Shown one piece after another: positions 13,175-18,700 of a stretch of DNA of 64,000 bases; the stretch's first letter is position 1, and each line of letters opens with the position of its first letter. Where the stretch lies: contig NC_083223.1 in the NCBI RefSeq assembly GCF_032191835.1, positions 142,166,001-142,230,000 of the forward strand. The letters run 5' to 3'. The notes beneath the pieces are model-generated. The model did not search any database and had not been told where the DNA came from. It saw nothing but the letters and a program-made list of their open reading frames with translations. The position numbers and the translations under genes were made by a program. Origin of the DNA: Heteronotia binoei (Eukaryota).

Positions 13175-14475
13175 CCGTCCTTCATCCCCTTCAGTCCGGC
13201 TTCTGCCCAGGCCATGGGACGGAGAGGGTGCTGGTCGCCCTAGTAGATGACCTGCAATGGCATCTGCATCGGGGCGGCTCGGCGGTGCTGATGTTGTTGG
13301 ACCTATCGGCAGCGTTTGATATGGTTGAGCATCGGCTACTGGCCCGCCGCCTCGCCGACGCGGGGATTCAGGGGTTGGCCTTGCAATGGCTTTCCTCTTT
13401 CCTTGAAGGTCGGAGACAGAGGGTCGCTATTGGGGATGAGCTGTCCCGGAGGCACACGCTTGATTGCAGGGTGCCTCAGGGTGCAGTTCTCTCCCCAATG
13501 TTATTTAACATCTATATGCGTCCCCTCGCCCAGATTGCCCGAAGGTACGGGCTGGGTTGTCACCAGTATGCTGATGACACCCAGCTCTATCTGCTTATGG
13601 ACGACTGGCTGGTCTGTAGCCCACAAAATCTGGACTGGGCGTTACAGGCTGTGGCTGGGTGGCTCAGGCTGAGCGGGCTGAGGCTAAATCCGGCAAAGAC
13701 AGAGGTCCTTTGCTTGGGCCGTCGGGGTCCGGGAAGGGAAATCCCCCTTCCGGTTTTTGACAGAGCGCCGCTGATTGCGACGCATAGGGTCAAGAGCTTG
13801 GGGGTACTACTGGAGCCTTCCTTAACAATGGAGGCCCAGATAGCAGCCACTGCCAAGTCTGCATTTTTCCATCTTAGGCAGGCAAGGCAGCTGGCTCCCT
13901 TCCTGGAGCGCAACGATCTAGCAATGGTGATCAATGCAATGGTCACCTCGAGGTTGGACTACTGCAATGCCCTCTACATGGGGCTGCCCCTGTGCCGAAC
14001 CCGGAAATTGCAGTTGGTGCAGAACGCCGCCGCCTGGTTGTTATTGGGGCTCCCAAGATGGGAGCACATCCAGCCGGGACTCTGGGCTCTGCACTGGCTG
14101 CCAATACTCTACCGAGTTCGGTACAAGGTGCTGGTCATTACCTTTAAAGCCCTATATGGCCTAGGACCTGCCTACCTGAGGAACCGTCTCTTCCCACACG
14201 TTCCCCAGAGAGTACTGAGATCAGGAACTCAAAATCTCCTTGTTGTCCCCAGGCCAAAGGAAGCCCGTTTGAAAACTACAAGGGACAGGGCCTTCTCCGT
14301 AATGGCCCCTTCCTGGTAGAACCAGCTGCCGGAAGAGGAAAGGGCCCTGTGGGACCTTGCTCAATTCCGCAGGGCCTGTAAGACAGTCCTCTTCCGGCTG
14401 GCCCACAACTAACCGGCACTGAACCTGAACTGAGTATAGCTGTAAGATTGCTGTATGATTTTAATGTTTACGTAT
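13175..14475 (+). pseudogene. L2-clade LINE, 5'-truncated RT region plus start of 3' UTR
   Basis: ORF 13228-14319: LLDLSAAFDMV, VPQGAVLSPMLFNIYM, HQYADDTQLY, LHWLP. Premature TAG at 14317-14319 (probably TGG>TAG). The 3' UTR is interrupted by the RTE and resumes at 18573. Confidence 0.92.
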
Positions 14476-14501
14476 CTTGGCTTGGCTTCGCGAACGAAGA
14501 T

Positions 14502-17500
14502 TTAAGAAGGGTGAAATAGTCCACGTCTGCTGCAGGCTCGCTGGTGGCTGACAAGACCAATGCGGGACAGGCAGGTCCGGCCACAGTGGCTGCAGGGAAA
14601 AGTCTGATTTAGGGTTGGTGCTGTAGCAGTGCGATTCTTCCTCAATCTCCTTTTGTCCTCAAGACCAGCTATGCGTGCGTTCTCAAAAGAAGAGACAGCC
14701 TGGTGGATGGTGTGCCTCCATGCTTTGCGATCTGAGGCTAGGTCAGACCACTGGTAATGGTTGATGCGACAGGTGCCAAGGGATTTCTTCAAGGAGTCCT
14801 TGTACCTCTTCTTTGGTGCCCCTCTATTTCGATGGCCGGTGGAGAGTTTGCCATACAGGGCAATCTTGGGAAGGCGGTGGTTTTCCATCCTAGAAATATG
14901 CCCTGCCCAGCGCAGCTGCGTCTTCAACAGCAGTGCCTCGATGCTGGTAACCTCCGCCCGCTTGAGAACTTCAGTGTTGGTCACAAAGTCACTCCAGTGG
15001 ATGTTGAGGATGGTGCGAAGGCAGCGCTGATGAAAGCGCTCGAGGAGTCGCAGGTGATGACGGTATAAAACCCACGATTCGGAGCCGTAGATGAGGGTTG
15101 TCATCACAACTGCTTTGTAAACATTGATCTTTGTGCCTTTTTTCAGATGCTTGTTGCTCCACACTCTTTTGTGCAGTCGGCCAAAGGCACGGTTTGCCTT
15201 TGCCAGCCTGTTGTCAATCTCCTTGTCGATCTTAGCATCTGAGGAGATGATGCACCCCAGGTAGCTGAACTGCTGGACTGTCTTCAGAACTGATTCACCC
15301 ACAGTGATGCAGGGAGGGTGATAATCTTCCTGGGGTGCAGGCTGGTGGAGAACTTCTGTCTTCTTCAGACTAACTTCTAGGCCGAATAGCTTGGCAGCCT
15401 CTGCAAAGCAGGACGTCATATGCTGCAGAGCTGATACCGAGTGGGAGACGAGTGCAGCATCATCAGCAAACAGTAGCTCTTGGATGAGTTTTTCCATTGT
15501 CTTGGAGTGGGCCTTTAGTCGCCTCAGGTTGAACAGGCTGCCATCGGTGCGATAGCGGATGTAGACACCATCGTCATCATCTAGATCTACTGCGGCTCTT
15601 TGAAGCATCATGCTAAAGAACATCGTAAAGAGAGTTGGCGCGAGAACGCAGCCTTGCTTTACACCTGTGCTTATTGGGAAGGTCTCCGAGAGGTCGTTGC
15701 AGTGTCTGACTTGGCCTCGCTGGTCTTCGTGTAGCTGGATGATCATGCTGAGGAACCTTGGAGGACATCCTAAACGTTCCAAGATTTGCCACAGGCTTTT
15801 CCTGCTAACGGTATCGAAAGCTTTGGTAAGGTCGACAAAAGTCACATACAGAGCCTTGTTCTGTTCCCTGCATTTCTCTTGGAGCTGCCTGAGAACAAAT
15901 ACCATGTCGGTGGTGCTCCTGTTAGCTCTGAAGCCGCACTGGCTCTCTGGGAGGAGTTCTTCTGCAATGGCGGGCACCAGTCTGTTCAGGAGTATTCTGG
16001 CAAGGATTTTGCCTGCGATGGAGAGCAGGGTTATCCCCCGGTAGTTGGAGCAGTCTGACTTTTCCCCTTTGTTCTTGTATAGGGTGATGATGATTGCATC
16101 GCGAAAGTCCTGTGGTAATTTGCCTTGTTCCCAGCAGGTGACAAGTACTTTGTGAAGTGAGCTATGTAGTACTGTGCCCCCATGCTTCCAGATCTCTGGT
16201 GGAATTCCATCAACTCCTGCTGCCTTGCCACTTTTCAGTTGCTTGATGGCTTTAACAGTCTCTTCTAGAGTGGGGATCTCATCCAACTCTGTTTTCACTG
16301 GTTGAAGTGGGGTGAGGTGAATTGCTGAATCTTGAACTACGCGGTTGGCACTGAAGAGAACCTGAAAATACTCCGACCACCGGTTCAATATGGATGCCTT
16401 GTCTGTGAGGAGCACTTGGCCGTCTGCACTACGCAAGGGACTCTGAGTCTGATATGATGGACCATATACTGCCTTCAGGGCTTCGTAGAACCCTCTTAAA
16501 TCACCAGTGTCTGCACACAGCTGGGTTCTCTCAGCAAGCTTGGTCCACCACTCGTTCTGAATGTCTCGAAGCTTGCACTGGAGGTTGCCACATACAGCGC
16601 GAAAGGTTGCTTTTTTCCTAGGACAGGAGGGCTGAGCAAGATGTGCTTGGTAGGCAGATCTCTTCTTCGCCAGTAAATCTTGGATCTCGTGATTGTTCGC
16701 ATCAAACCAGTCCTTGTTCTTCCTTGTGGAGAACCCGAGGACTTCTTCAGAGATCTGCAGGACGGTAGTTTTTAGGTGTTCCCAGAGTGCTTCTGGAGAA
16801 GGGTCTGTGGGGCAACTGGGGTCCTCAATTCTTGACTGGAGTTTTGCCTGGAAGGCAGCTTTAACTTCGGCTGACTGGAGACTGCCAACCTGAAACTTCC
16901 TCCGAGGGATACCTCCTCTCCTGGGTGTGGGTTTAAAGTGAAGACGGAGATTGCAGCGTACAAGACGATGATCCGTATGACATTCTGCACTGGGCATTAC
17001 TCGGGTGTGTAAGACTTCTCGAAGGTCTCTCTGGCGCACCAGAATGTAGTCGATAAGGTGCCAGTGCTTGGACCGTGGGTGCATCCAGGTTGTCTTCAGA
17101 CTGTTCTTCTGCTGGAAGATAGTGTTGGTGATGGTGAGCTGGTGCTCCATGCAGAATTCTAGCAGGAGGCGCCCGTTGTCATTGCAGTTGCCAATGCCGT
17201 GTTTGCCAAGTACTCCTTTCCAGGCTTCCGAGTCTTTACCTACTCTGGCATTGAAGTCGCCAAGGATGATCACCTTGTCCTCTGTAGGGGTCTTCCATAC
17301 GAGGTTGTGTAGATCAGCATAGAACTTGTTCTTTTCTGCAGGATCTGCTTGAAGGGTTGGGGCATACACACTGAAGAGTGTTGCATGCTGCTTGTTTTGA
17401 AGTGGGAGGCGCATGGACATGATGCGATCTGAGTGACCTGTTGGCAGGTTTTCGAGTTTGGAGGCAATGGAGTTCCTGACCATGAAGCCAATGCCAGAAA

Positions 17501-17726
17501 GGCGGCTCTCAGCCTTTGACTTACCTGACCAATAGAGGGTATAGCCAGCACCGTGTTCTTGAAGACTACCTTCCTCAGGGAAACGGACCTCACTGAGAGC
17601 TGCTATGTCGATATTCAACCTGAGAAGTTCGTGGGCAACTAGAGCAGAGCATCGTTCAGGGCGACCACTGTCTACTGTGTCAAGCATGGTTCTGATGTTC
17701 CAACACACAAGCTTTAGTCTTTGCAC
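14502..17726 (-). CDS. RTE ORF2: APE endonuclease - reverse transcriptase - C-terminal C2HC zinc finger
   Basis: WNIRT, LSE, VYAP, LGDFNARVG, IDY and TDH endonuclease motifs. NYRGITLL, QCGFR, FVDLTKAFD, GVKQGC, LFADD and YLG RT motifs. CSHCGRTC...HQRAC finger. No internal stop; the frame is open from 17801. Track start is GTG. Confidence 0.95.
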   Translation of the reverse strand: MQRLKLVCWNIRTMLDTVDSGRPERCSALVAHELLRLNIDIAALSEVRFPEEGSLQEHGAGYTLYWSGKSKAESRLSGIGFMVRNSIASKLENLPTGHSDRIMSMRLPLQNKQHATLFSVYAPTLQADPAEKNKFYADLHNLVWKTPTEDKVIILGDFNARVGKDSEAWKGVLGKHGIGNCNDNGRLLLEFCMEHQLTITNTIFQQKNSLKTTWMHPRSKHWHLIDYILVRQRDLREVLHTRVMPSAECHTDHRLVRCNLRLHFKPTPRRGGIPRRKFQVGSLQSAEVKAAFQAKLQSRIEDPSCPTDPSPEALWEHLKTTVLQISEEVLGFSTRKNKDWFDANNHEIQDLLAKKRSAYQAHLAQPSCPRKKATFRAVCGNLQCKLRDIQNEWWTKLAERTQLCADTGDLRGFYEALKAVYGPSYQTQSPLRSADGQVLLTDKASILNRWSEYFQVLFSANRVVQDSAIHLTPLQPVKTELDEIPTLEETVKAIKQLKSGKAAGVDGIPPEIWKHGGTVLHSSLHKVLVTCWEQGKLPQDFRDAIIITLYKNKGEKSDCSNYRGITLLSIAGKILARILLNRLVPAIAEELLPESQCGFRANRSTTDMVFVLRQLQEKCREQNKALYVTFVDLTKAFDTVSRKSLWQILERLGCPPRFLSMIIQLHEDQRGQVRHCNDLSETFPISTGVKQGCVLAPTLFTMFFSMMLQRAAVDLDDDDGVYIRYRTDGSLFNLRRLKAHSKTMEKLIQELLFADDAALVSHSVSALQHMTSCFAEAAKLFGLEVSLKKTEVLHQPAPQEDYHPPCITVGESVLKTVQQFSYLGCIISSDAKIDKEIDNRLAKANRAFGRLHKRVWSNKHLKKGTKINVYKAVVMTTLIYGSESWVLYRHHLRLLERFHQRCLRTILNIHWSDFVTNTEVLKRAEVTSIEALLLKTQLRWAGHISRMENHRLPKIALYGKLSTGHRNRGAPKKRYKDSLKKSLGTCRINHYQWSDLASDRKAWRHTIHQAVSSFENARIAGLEDKRRLRKNRTATAPTLNQTFPCSHCGRTCLSRIGLVSHQRACSRRGLFHPS

Positions 17727-17848
17727 ACTTTGTGAGGCAGGTGCATGCCTTTTCTTTGTTGCTATTTTTTGACCGCAAGTAAGGATGCCCGTTGACCGCG
17801 GCTAGCCAACTGGGTTGGAGGAGACGAGCTTTGTTTAGGCCACCTTTT

Positions 17849-18172
17849 CTAGGCCCCTCTCCGTGTGGAGCAAGCAGTGCTGTCCCTAGATAAGGCTGCT
17901 TGGTCGTTCAGGGTGCTGCCGAAAAATGCTTTCGTCTCCGGGTTAGCATCAGGCGACCAATACCCTGAACCGCCTACATGCAGGATCAGGACTGCGGCTT
18001 CCAGTGGCACCTTCCACCTGCCGTTTCGCCCCTTGCCCATCGCTGCAGGACTTGATGCGTTGTGGGTTGTGTATGTGGATATGCCCTTCAGGCCTGCGCA
18101 GAGGAATTTTTTAGGTGAAGCCCAGTGTGCGCGGTACTGGCTCCACCCTTTCACCTGGGGGTCATCTGCCAT
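17849..18172 (-). CDS. Short upstream ORF (107 aa) in the RTE 5' region, function unknown
   Basis: ATG-initiated, in a different frame from ORF2, lying between the predicted ribozyme and ORF2. No recognisable domain. Confidence 0.4.
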   Translation of the reverse strand: MADDPQVKGWSQYRAHWASPKKFLCAGLKGISTYTTHNASSPAAMGKGRNGRWKVPLEAAVLILHVGGSGYWSPDANPETKAFFGSTLNDQAALSRDSTACSTRRGA

Positions 18173-18344
18173 GGCCCAATAAGCCGGGACGCCGGCAGCG
18201 AGTCCTCCAGGTGGTAGGTGTTACATTAACGAGCTCTATCTGCCCGGGTTTGATGTTAGAGTTTTCCTTCTCTTAGGCTGGCAAGGTTGGTGGGCCCAGC
18301 CTGCCCATCCGGTTATACCGCCGGACAATTCGGTCGCACCATGA

Positions 18345-18553
18345 CGTAGCAAACTCTGTGAAAAACGGGGGGGACCAGCGAGAAGGTGTTGCTACGGATG
18401 CAGTAATGCAGGAGAGGCCATTGCAGTTACCATCTGCCAGGCATAGCCAGACAGTGACCACGCGGCATTCACTACACCGGGAGAGGAGAGGCTATGTATT
18501 GCGCATACACTTTCCCTGGGGGGGTAGGATACCCAGAGGGAGCCCACCCCCCC
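18345..18553 (-). ncRNA. Predicted HDV-like (CPEB3-like) self-cleaving ribozyme at the RTE 5' end
   Basis: Hand-folded double pseudoknot on the minus strand: P1 G7 (18553-18547) with C7 (18373-18367); P2 CGUAGCAAC (18396-18388) with GUUUGCUACG (18354-18345, 1-nt bulge); P3 ACC/GGU; L3 UUCUCGCU; GU after P1; J4/2 CAGA (candidate catalytic C at 18358); P4 minimal. Confidence 0.7.
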
Positions 18554-18572
18554 ACCCCCAATGTTTACGTAT

Positions 18573-18700
18573 ATAACCGTGACAAATGTCTAGATTTTAA
18601 CTATGTAAATTATGAAATGTTAACCTTTTATGCTTAATTTTATATTCTTATGTTAGTTTTAAATGTTAATTTTTATATGTTGTAAGCCGCCCTGAGCCAC
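18573..18700 (+). mobile_element. Continuation of the L2 3' UTR after the RTE insertion
   Basis: AT-rich UTR ending TGTAAGCCGCCCTGAGCC; truncated before the tail and fused to a MITE. Confidence 0.8.

What the first reader, a model, noticed from the sequence alone, without database searches (positions are those of the whole stretch)
18345..18559. HDV/CPEB3-like self-cleaving ribozyme at the 5' end of a reptile RTE retrotransposon
Seen: on the minus strand the element starts GGGGGU-GGGGGGG. About 150 nt later it reads CGUAGCAAC-ACC-UUCUCGCU-GGU-CCCCCCC-GU-UUUUCA-CAGA-GUUUGCUACG. This maps element by element onto the HDV nested double pseudoknot: 7-bp P1 (G7/C7), 9-bp P2 with a 1-nt bulge, 3-bp P3, an 8-nt L3 one base from HDV's UCCUCGCU, a single P1.1 pair followed by GU as in CPEB3, near-absent P4, and a CNRA J4/2 with candidate catalytic C at 18358. 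The predicted cut (5' of G18553) is 6 nt from the TSD-defined 5' end. Established: HDV-like ribozymes process the 5' ends of R2 and some RTE elements from read-through transcripts and can aid translation initiation. Inference: this is an active or recently active ribozyme with a long structured J1/2 and minimal P4. I am not aware of one being described for a squamate RTE, but I cannot search to confirm novelty.
Basis: partly seen in the sequence, partly recalled or inferred. Interest (0 to 1): 0.85.

Follow-up and report, generated by a model that had tools for sequence, protein, structure and literature searches.

The report
Self-cutting RNA heading a reptile LINE
The first ~210 bases of this intact RTE jumping gene fold like the hepatitis-delta self-cutting RNA minus one helix, and matching base changes in relatives support the fold, so it is probably a real ribozyme of a known kind whose cutting is still untested.

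Summary
On the minus strand, a full-length RTE (18559 to 14476, 13-bp target-site duplication, intact 1074-aa endonuclease + reverse-transcriptase frame) begins with GGGGGU-GGGGGGG. After a 150-nt J1/2 comes a compact P2-P3-L3-P3'-P1'-P1.1-linker-CNRA-P2' core.

Rfam gives no hit, but it also misses canonical relatives, so that says little.

Five related RTE contigs from metagenomes carry the same P4-less design. Five more distant ones carry an HDV-like core with a P4 helix at the same spot (two complete with P1). Across the six P4-less members, 68 of 72 P2/P3 cells pair and 11 of 12 pairs show two-sided compensatory changes. P1 pairs perfectly in all seven sequences where both strands are available, using five different strand pairs. 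A covariance model built without the window finds the window site at E = 2.6e-10.

Catalytic-core letters (U20, C22, G25, the J4/2 C) never vary.

RNA-seq shows the 5' UTR is transcribed but neither shows nor excludes cleavage. Caveats for this copy: G1-C instead of G1·U, a -29 kcal/mol competing local hairpin, and 6 extra bases upstream of the predicted cut.

This scan had already found and followed up the same motif on other copies in this genome, with the same reading. Verdict: a real new member of a known kind; activity untested.

The parts
18560..18572 (.). 5' copy of the 13-bp target-site duplication ATACGTAAACATT
   Evidence: Identical string at 14463-14475
18554..18559 (-). GGGGGU: six element bases upstream of the predicted cut. 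Either added or slipped at integration, or the remnant of a longer G run that allows other P1 registers.
   Evidence: In RNA reads of a related organism, 18554 is mostly G (20 of 28 reads). Copy junctions lie at 18552, 18559 and 18560.
18547..18553 (-). P1 5' strand (G7); predicted cleavage 5' of G18553
   Evidence: 7/7 Watson-Crick pairs with 18373-18367, -15.7 kcal/mol. The homologous terminal runs in L001, L025, L085, L029, L060 and L077 all pair fully with their own P1'.
18397..18546 (-). J1/2 peripheral domain, 150 nt, predicted multi-hairpin. Its last helix (18478-18397) abuts P2.
   Evidence: Partly conserved: an invariant AUGGCCUCUCCU block.
18518..18530 (-). Local C-rich strand (CCUACCCCCCC) that can sequester the P1 G run in a competing hairpin
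   Evidence: MFE folds (-29 kcal/mol)
18388..18396 (-). P2 5' strand CGUAGCAAC
   Evidence: Pairs with 18354-18345. P2 covaries strongly among relatives. An A18393-U18348 to G-C change is seen among transcribed copies.
18385..18387 (-). P3 5' strand ACC
   Evidence: ACG/CGU in L085 and GCC/GGC in L021 keep the pairing.
18377..18384 (-). L3 UUCUCGCU. U18384 and G18379 correspond to U20 and G25; C18382 forms P1.1.
   Evidence: U1, C3 and G6 of L3 are invariant in all 11 sequences
18374..18376 (-). P3 3' strand GGU
18367..18373 (-). P1 3' strand (C7)
18365..18366 (-). G18366 pairs with C18382 (P1.1). U18365 faces U18383 (U·U), as in CPEB3.
   Evidence: [quoted passage not shown] Relatives with P4 have UCC plus GG (two G-C pairs).
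18359..18364 (-). 6-nt linker UUUUCA in place of P4
   Evidence: The linker is 5-6 nt in all six P4-less members. Its length and sequence vary among copies (18361 deletion, 18362 change).
18355..18358 (-). J4/2 CAGA with candidate catalytic C18358
   Evidence: C-N-R-A in 10 of 11 sequences; the C is invariant
18345..18354 (-). P2 3' strand GUUUGCUACG (U18353 bulged)
   Evidence: A one-base bulge at this position recurs in L001, L025, L085, L021 and L029.
17688..18344 (-). Remainder of the 5' UTR, including a block conserved across distant RTEs
14502..17726 (-). Intact RTE open frame, 1074 codons as listed (first AUG at 17687): AP-endonuclease plus reverse transcriptase
   Evidence: (PF03372 2.3e-11, PF00078 8.7e-36)
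14476..14485 (-). 3' end of the element, (CCAAG)2
14463..14475 (.). 3' copy of the target-site duplication

Best explanation
The first 209-215 nt of this RTE LINE encode an HDV-like (delta-like) self-cleaving ribozyme of a minimal, P4-less design with a 150-nt structured J1/2 insertion.

Proposed mechanism (inferred, not shown):
- The element is transcribed as part of a longer host or read-through RNA.
- The terminal G run (18553-18547) pairs with the C run 160 nt downstream to form P1.
- P2, P3 and a one-pair P1.1 complete the nested double pseudoknot.
- C18358 in J4/2, together with a Mg2+ held by the U18384/G18379 pair, cleaves the backbone 5' of G18553. With a homopolymeric P1, another G-run register is possible.
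- Cleavage leaves a 5'-OH on the element RNA, which then serves as template for target-primed reverse transcription. The folded 5' end may also help translation, as proposed for R2 and other ribozyme-bearing retrotransposons.

Shown here: the fold, its conservation and covariation, its place at the element terminus, and transcription of the region.
Inferred: catalysis, the exact cut site, and the biological role.
For: 1. Exact element-by-element fit.
2. Five independent RTE contigs (ORFs about 44-80% identical) have the same P4-less architecture: L001, L025, L085, L029 and L021. In the first four it sits at the start of the element, directly after compositionally different flank.
3. P2/P3 covariation. 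On the six true members, 68 of 72 cells pair and 11 of 12 pairs show two-sided changes. On the model-fitted alignment, 94.3% of cells pair against 69.6% in shuffles, 0/500 shuffles reach the observed value, and slid controls give 26-45%. RNAalifold recovers P2 on its own with compensatory pairs.
4. P1 is fully paired in 7 of 7 sequences with five different strand pairs: GGGGGGG/CCCCCCC, GGGGGGU/GCCCCCU, GGGGGGU/ACCCCCU, GGGUGU/ACACCU, GGGGGUC/GACCCCU, GCUGGCC/GGCCAGU.
5. In L025 a 130-nt 5' extension carries a new perfect terminal G run, while the old homologous run has decayed.
6. P1.1 covaries: UUC plus GU in P4-less members, UCC plus GG in four of the five members with P4 (UCC plus GU in L008).
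7. U20, C22, G25 and the J4/2 C are invariant in 11 sequences.
8. A covariance model built only from four metagenome sequences finds the window site at 57.1 bits, E = 2.6e-10. It is the only significant hit in the 64 kb.
9. More distant RTEs (L060, L077, L010, L005, L008) carry an HDV-like core with P4 at the same place.
10. Among transcribed copies in a related organism, 18393 and 18348 change together in similar shares (A-U to G-C in P2).
11. Precedents: HDV-like ribozymes in RTEs (PMC6765202), large activating J1/2 domains (PMC4908430), and minimal drzs that lack P4 (PMC10879173).
Against: - No cleavage data. RNA-seq shows no pile-up of molecule ends at 18553. It does show reads running across the junction into flanks: 19 loose-end reads in X22. 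The library is unstranded and only about 6% of each run was read.
- This copy has G1-C rather than the G1·U wobble seen in all six relatives.
- A -29 kcal/mol local hairpin (G run with 18530-18518) forms first during transcription and competes with the -15.7 kcal/mol P1. Forcing P1+P3 costs 7.3 kcal/mol against the nested MFE.
- The predicted cut is 6 nt inside the element.
- There are no Rfam hits.
- Several of the closest relatives lack the module altogether, so it is not indispensable to the family.
Confidence: 0.75

Rival explanations
1. The region is a conserved structured 5' UTR element that descends from an HDV-like ribozyme but no longer cuts. It would serve only as a protein-binding, template-end or translation-initiation structure.
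For: - P4 is lost, P1.1 is reduced to one G-C pair, and this copy has G1-C.
- A strong competing hairpin exists.
- Junction-spanning RNA reads exist.
- Relatives without the module still have intact ORFs.
Against: - Every residue needed for catalysis (J4/2 C, U20, G25, C22-G pair) is invariant across elements whose P2 sequences have turned over completely. That is hard to explain without selection for catalysis.
- The P1 strand stays at the very terminus even after a 130-nt extension.
- P4-less HDV-like ribozymes are reported as a natural subgroup, and its theta members self-cleave in vitro (PMC10879173). CPEB3 works with the same one-pair P1.1 (PMC4836649).
Confidence: 0.17
2. The G run's real partner is the local C-rich strand, forming a 5'-terminal hairpin. 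The pairing with the distal C run is incidental, so there is no P1 and no ribozyme.
For: The local hairpin is far more stable in this copy (-29 kcal/mol). RNAalifold predicts a local helix in all four aligned sequences.
Against: - This leaves the conserved P2/P3/L3/CNRA core and the invariant C run unexplained.
- In L025 the local helix uses an internal G run, while a separate terminal G run matches the distal strand, including a U-A pair.
- In L029, L060 and L077 P1 has other sequences yet still pairs fully.
- In L085 the unconstrained MFE already contains P1.
Confidence: 0.05
3. The match to the HDV fold is a chance resemblance in a G/C-rich 5' UTR.
For: No Rfam hit. Loose descriptors give many hits (29).
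Against: The strict descriptor gave zero hits outside RTE 5' UTRs in 2.8 Mb. An independent model hits at E = 2.6e-10. Covariation is seen.
Confidence: 0.02

Closest known systems
HDV-like (delta-like) ribozymes at the 5' ends of non-LTR retrotransposons: R2, L1Tc, baggins and RTE elements (Ruminski et al. 2011, as summarised in PMC6765202; R2 in PMC3774820)
   Same: - Nested double-pseudoknot order.
- P1 begins at or next to the element's first base.
- The element lacks an obvious promoter of its own and is released from a co-transcript.
- CNRA J4/2 with a conserved C.
   Different: No P4 helix, a 150-nt J1/2, and a vertebrate (squamate) host. The Ruminski paper itself was not held, so I could not compare sequences with its RTE examples.
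Minimal HDV-like ribozymes lacking P4 (drz-Mtgn, Riccitelli et al. 2014; theta ribozymes, PMC10879173)
   Same: P4 is replaced by a few nucleotides; the rest of the core is kept. The compact relative L029 is only 95 nt.
   Different: Those were found in metagenomes of unknown origin or next to phage tRNAs, and they have a short J1/2. Here the host is a eukaryotic LINE, and this copy has a long J1/2.
drz-Agam-2-1 of Anopheles gambiae (PMC4908430)
   Same: A large structured J1/2 (P1.2) domain between P1 and P2. That domain was shown to speed cleavage by bringing P1 and P2 together.
   Different: drz-Agam-2-1 has a 12-bp P2, versus 9 bp here; the passages I read do not say whether it has a P4. 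The J1/2 here is predicted to be multi-hairpin and is untested.
Mammalian CPEB3 ribozyme (PMC4836649)
   Same: - L3 begins UUC and P1' is followed by GU, giving one G-C plus a U·U in P1.1.
- L029 has an L3 of UUCACGU, which matches the CPEB3 L3 as I recall it (sequence from my own knowledge, not checked against a source here).
- P1 is G-rich.
   Different: CPEB3 is a single-copy intronic sequence with a P4 hairpin and a short J1/2. It is not part of a retrotransposon.

Membership tests
HDV-like (delta-like) self-cleaving ribozymes | Strand order P1-J1/2-P2-P3-L3-P3'-P1'-P1.1-(P4)-J4/2-P2', giving a nested double pseudoknot | tested here: met
   Contiguous strings verified in the window and in 10 relatives
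HDV-like (delta-like) self-cleaving ribozymes | 6-7 bp P1 whose first nucleotide is the cleavage site, usually G1 in a G·U wobble | tested here: inconclusive
   P1 is 7/7 and starts with G. This copy has G-C at pair 1, while all six relatives have G·U. A homopolymer run makes the register ambiguous.
HDV-like (delta-like) self-cleaving ribozymes | 3-bp P3 closing a 7-8 nt L3 that carries U20, C22 and G25 | tested here: met
   ACC / UUCUCGCU / GGU. U1, C3 and G6 of L3 are invariant in 11 sequences, and P3 covaries.
HDV-like (delta-like) self-cleaving ribozymes | P1.1 mini-helix between L3 and the nucleotides after P1' | tested here: met
   C18382-G18366 plus U·U, as in CPEB3. It covaries with the UCC/GG form found in four of the five relatives with P4.
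HDV-like (delta-like) self-cleaving ribozymes | J4/2 with the catalytic cytosine (C-N-R-A) directly before the P2 3' strand | tested here: met
   CAGA at 18358-18355. The C is invariant in 11 of 11 and the CNRA pattern holds in 10 of 11.
HDV-like (delta-like) self-cleaving ribozymes | Helices supported by compensatory changes among homologues | tested here: met
HDV-like (delta-like) self-cleaving ribozymes | P4 hairpin. Present in HDV and CPEB3 but absent from minimal drzs, so it is not a defining feature. | tested here: not met
   A 6-nt linker replaces it. PMC10879173 states that minimal drzs lack the P4 domain.
HDV-like (delta-like) self-cleaving ribozymes | Mg2+-dependent self-scission giving a 5'-OH and a 2',3'-cyclic phosphate | not testable with these tools
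   RNA-seq gave no end pile-up and cannot decide the question
HDV-like (delta-like) self-cleaving ribozymes | Match to an Rfam HDV-type covariance model | tested here: not met
   No hit at E up to 10. The same search also misses the relatives that carry P4 (L060, L077, L010), so it has little weight.
RTE clade of non-LTR retrotransposons | Single long ORF with an N-terminal AP endonuclease and a reverse transcriptase, short 3' end with a simple repeat, and a target-site duplication | tested here: met
   Pfam PF03372 and PF00078. The element ends in (CCAAG)2 and has a 13-bp TSD. Homologues carry the same two domains. Clade assignment by phylogeny was not done.
Mammalian CPEB3 ribozyme | Single-copy sequence in a CPEB3 intron, with a P4 hairpin | tested here: not met
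   This is a multi-copy LINE 5' end without P4. The resemblance is limited to L3 and P1.1.

The most novel reading that the evidence does not exclude
P4-less 'minimal' HDV-like ribozymes, first found in metagenomes with origin undetermined, may in part be the 5' ends of a horizontally spreading clade of RTE LINEs of aquatic animals that also reached a squamate.

In the squamate subfamily, the homopolymeric G/C P1 would let the ribozyme cut in several registers. Together with the strong local G:C hairpin acting as an attenuator, this would produce the heterogeneous 5' ends seen among copies (junctions at 18552, 18559 and 18560).
Probability: 0.2. Interest if true: 0.6.

Novelty: new member of a known kind. 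Interest (0 to 1): 0.45.

Why it matters
This gives a vertebrate example of a retrotransposon that probably defines its own RNA 5' end with a minimal HDV-like ribozyme.

It also provides a natural series within one RTE clade:
- core with P4 and a short J1/2: L060, L077;
- core with P4 and at least 130 nt of upstream contig sequence with no matching P1 strand in it: L010;
- P4-less with a short J1/2: L029;
- P4-less with a 150-280 nt J1/2: window, L001, L085, L025.

Such a series is useful for studying how peripheral domains are gained and lost in a ribozyme. It may also point to a eukaryotic source for some P4-less ribozymes of unknown origin.

It is not a new principle. HDV-like ribozymes in RTEs, P4-less variants and large J1/2 domains have each been described.

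Tried and rejected
- **Rfam scans** of the window region and of 12 related loci gave no HDV-type hit. I set this aside as uninformative because relatives carrying a full core with P4 are missed too. The weak S6-S18-Chlorobi leader hit at 18477-18561 (E = 0.16) is a G/C-run artefact.
- **Pattern scans** of viral contigs (10 hits) and genome contigs (111 hits) for the core string returned only chance matches, with no RTE context.
- **Other close relatives lack the core.**
  - No core was found in L082-L084, L086-L089 or L211-L215.
  - Homology to the window stops about 460-570 nt before the ATG in most of them: L002, L082, L083, L086, L088, L089, L211-L213 and L215.
  - L214 stops at about 343-367 nt, L084 shares nothing with the others, and the longer L087 match is a duplicated segment.
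- **P3 contig.** Its DNA could not be fetched.
- **Loose descriptors** without P2 or with a relaxed L3 are non-specific: 29 hits, equally on both strands.
- **L064 second site** (7611) is a broken fragment without a P2 partner, so I excluded it.
- **L021** has a one-base deletion in P3'/P1' and no convincing P1 5' strand. I used it for P2 and P3 only.
- **L005, L008, L010**: I found no convincing P1 5' strand, or the contig ends first.
- **RNA-seq end mapping** gave no verdict on cleavage.
- **Ruminski et al. 2011** (PMC3308841) is not held, so I could not compare directly with published RTE ribozymes.
- **Literature searches** for HDV-like ribozymes in lizards or squamates found nothing relevant.

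Full report
**The element**

On the minus strand the window holds one full-length RTE-type LINE.
- Its target-site duplication ATACGTAAACATT sits at 18572-18560 and 14475-14463, so the element runs from G18559 to G14476 (4084 bp) and ends in (CCAAG)2.
- The long frame 17726-14502 is open for 1074 codons and carries an AP-endonuclease domain and a reverse-transcriptase domain.
- It is the only copy in the window.

**The observation**

- The RNA begins GGGGGU (18559-18554), then G7 (18553-18547).
- After exactly 150 nt comes CGUAGCAAC-ACC-UUCUCGCU-GGU-CCCCCCC-GU-UUUUCA-CAGA-GUUUGCUACG (18396-18345).
- P1 is 7/7, P3 is 3/3, and P2 is 9 bp with U18353 bulged. C18382 pairs with G18366 as a one-pair P1.1, and the candidate catalytic C is 18358.
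- The 21-nt core occurs once in the window, with none expected in shuffles.
- A strict descriptor (P3, L3 = U[UC]CNCG.., G[GU], CNRA, P2 of at least 7 bp, perfect P1) hit only RTE 5' UTRs in 2.8 Mb of both-strand sequence, which included about 120 unrelated bacterial and viral loci.

**Databases**

Rfam 15 gives no HDV, CPEB3 or drz hit even at E = 10. It also fails on related elements whose HDV-like core includes a P4 helix. Absence of a hit therefore carries little weight.

**Relatives**

The ORF's closest proteins (74-80% identity) come from about 4-kb metagenome contigs. Others come from amphioxus, a carp, mantis shrimp and prawns.

I fetched 94 related loci. Five carry the same P4-less architecture upstream of the ORF on the coding strand:

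| Locus | Total length | J1/2 | Note |
|---|---|---|---|
| L001 | 210 nt | 152 nt | |
| L085 | 211 nt | 150 nt | |
| L025 | 339 nt | 280 nt | |
| L029 | 95 nt | 41 nt | |
| L021 | not determined | not determined | core only; P1 unclear |

In L025, L085 and L029 the P1 strand begins exactly where an AT-rich or microsatellite flank ends.

Five more distant RTEs (L060, L077, L010, L005, L008) carry an HDV-like core with a P4 hairpin at the same position; four of them also have a two-pair P1.1 (L008 has UCC plus GU). L060 and L077 are complete with P1.

**Covariation**

All segments were verified as exact contiguous strings.
- **P1.** It is fully paired in all seven sequences where both strands are known, with five different strand pairs. 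Pair 7 is G-C in the window, U·G in L001 and L085, U-A in L025 and C-G in L060 and L077. L029 has U-A at pairs 4 and 6.
- **P3.** It changes ACC/GGU to ACG/CGU, GCC/GGC and GCG/CGC.
- **P2.** Its sequence has turned over completely (CGUAGCAAC, CCAUAGCAGU, CAACCUUCAGC, CCACCACACC, GGAUAGCU) yet it always pairs. The same one-base bulge sits next to J4/2.
- **P1.1.** It covaries as a unit: UUC plus GU in the P4-less members and UCC plus GG in four of the five members with P4 (L008 has UCC plus GU).
- **Core residues.** U1, C3 and G6 of L3 and the J4/2 C never change.
- **RNAalifold.** On four sequences it recovers P2 with compensatory pairs without being told.
- **Independent model.** A covariance model built from L001, L025, L085 and L021 only finds the window site at 57.1 bits, E = 2.6e-10. 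It also found L029.
- **Pair counts.** On the model-fitted alignment, 94.3% of cells pair against 69.6% in shuffles (0 of 500 reach the observed value) and 26-45% when the partner is slid. That alignment contains a few chance rows fitted to the model. Restricted to the six true members, 68 of 72 cells pair and 11 of 12 pairs show two-sided changes.

**A telling case**

L025 has a 130-nt 5' extension. The run homologous to the others' P1 strand has decayed to GGGGUGU. A new perfect GGGGGGU sits at the new terminus and matches its own P1' (ACCCCCU), including the U-A pair. This fits selection for a P1 strand at the very end of the RNA.

**Energetics**

- In L085 the unconstrained minimum-energy fold already contains P1 and P3.
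- In the window, forcing P1 and P3 costs 7.3 kcal/mol against the nested optimum. That comparison cannot credit P2 (-10.5 kcal/mol) at the same time.
- The window copy has a very stable competing hairpin between the G run and a local C run (18530-18518), at about -29 kcal/mol against -15.7 for P1. It would form first during transcription and may slow or gate cleavage. This is inference.

**RNA evidence**

RNA runs were found for a related organism. Raw reads from three of them, plus the contigs of a fourth, were laid on 18000-18700.
- The 5' UTR is represented at depths of about 5-35 with only about 6% of each run read. Depth collapses at 18552-18560, and the flank is empty.
- The library behaves as unstranded.
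- No pile-up of molecule ends at the G run was reported.
- Reads cross the junction into other flanks: 13 from one locus and 6 from others in X22. Uncleaved RNA, antisense or intronic RNA, or DNA is therefore present.
- This neither shows nor excludes cleavage.

The same table gives variation among copies:
- 18393 and 18348 change in similar shares, which turns the A-U pair of P2 into G-C. Linkage on single reads was not shown.
- L3 position 4 varies U/C.
- The linker varies in length and sequence.
- 18554 is G in most reads.
- Copy junctions lie at 18552, 18559 and 18560.

**The six extra bases**

The predicted cut lies 6 nt inside this copy. Two readings fit.
- G-rich bases were added or slipped at integration.
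- The source copy had a longer uninterrupted G run, as most transcribed copies do at 18554. A homopolymer P1 could then form, and cut, in several registers, one of which coincides with G18559.

I cannot decide between them.

**Comparison with what is known**

- HDV-like ribozymes at the 5' ends of R2, L1Tc, baggins and RTE elements are established (PMC6765202, PMC3774820).
- Large J1/2 domains that activate the core are known from drz-Agam-2-1 (PMC4908430).
- Minimal drzs lacking P4 are known from metagenomes, with origin undetermined (PMC10879173).
- The one G-C plus U·U form of P1.1 is that of CPEB3 (PMC4836649).
- I found no paper describing such a ribozyme in a squamate. The study of horizontally transferred RTEs in sea snakes does not mention ribozymes (PMC7846101).
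- The primary RTE paper (Ruminski 2011) was not held.

**Earlier work in this scan**

The same motif was noted on at least nine other copies in this genome. Two follow-up agents reached the same reading. One of their notes calls the host a gecko, which I did not test. My tests were run independently of theirs and agree with them. What this report adds is specific to this copy and to the family:
- the 6-nt offset and its G-run context;
- the competing hairpin;
- the RNA-seq look;
- the within-family P2 change;
- L025's relocated P1;
- the compact L029.

**Verdict**

This is a real, well-supported HDV-like ribozyme fold at the head of an intact RTE. It is a new member of a known kind, with a P4-less, long-J1/2 layout. 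Catalysis is untested and, in this copy, possibly attenuated.

Noticed in passing
window 17750-18050 (minus strand): A roughly 300-nt block of the 5' UTR just upstream of the ORF is 68-86% identical at the nucleotide level to RTE contigs whose ORFs are only 45-50% identical in protein. The 107-codon ATG frame at 18172-17849 is not kept in L001. A conserved RNA element seems more likely than coding sequence.
   Followed up: partly
window 17687-17804 (minus strand): The conserved endonuclease N-terminal motif (..KLVCWNIRT..) lies in frame upstream of the first AUG (17687), and an in-frame stop sits at 17804-17802. L001 has the same layout. Translation may start at a non-AUG codon or by some unconventional route.
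   Followed up: partly
L002, L082, L083, L086, L087, L088, L089, L211, L215: These closest relatives (ORFs 73-80% identical) share only the proximal 510-570 nt of the 5' UTR with the window and lack the ribozyme module. Some share other upstream sequence among themselves. The family therefore has modular 5' ends.
   Followed up: partly
L025 147-434: A 130-nt 5' extension starts with a near-repeat of the internal 5' sequence (GGGGGGUGUUGUGAGCGG against CGGGGUGUGAGGUC). It looks like a 5'-terminal duplication that moved the P1 strand outward.
   Followed up: partly
L029 1-148; L060 4640-4835: Both elements begin directly after simple repeats, (TGTA)n and (GT)n. L029 is a compact 95-nt P4-less HDV-like ribozyme and would be a good candidate for a first bench test.
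   Followed up: partly
protein hits P0005, P0019, P0023, P0032: The nearest named relatives of a reptile RTE are from amphioxus (77%), carp (71%), mantis shrimp and prawns, besides marine metagenome contigs. This pattern is suggestive of horizontal transfer from aquatic animals, as described for sea-snake RTEs (PMC7846101).
   Followed up: no
window 18663-18700: RNA reads pile up again from 18663 outward, with many loose ends at 18663-18669. Another repeat, expressed in the same organism, appears to begin about 100 nt upstream of the RTE insertion. That would fit the companion note that the RTE sits inside another LINE.
   Followed up: no
window 18477-18561: Weak Rfam match to the S6-S18-Chlorobi ribosomal leader (24.3 bits, E = 0.16, below the gathering score). 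It is driven by the G-run/C-run hairpin and is a chance hit.
   Followed up: yes
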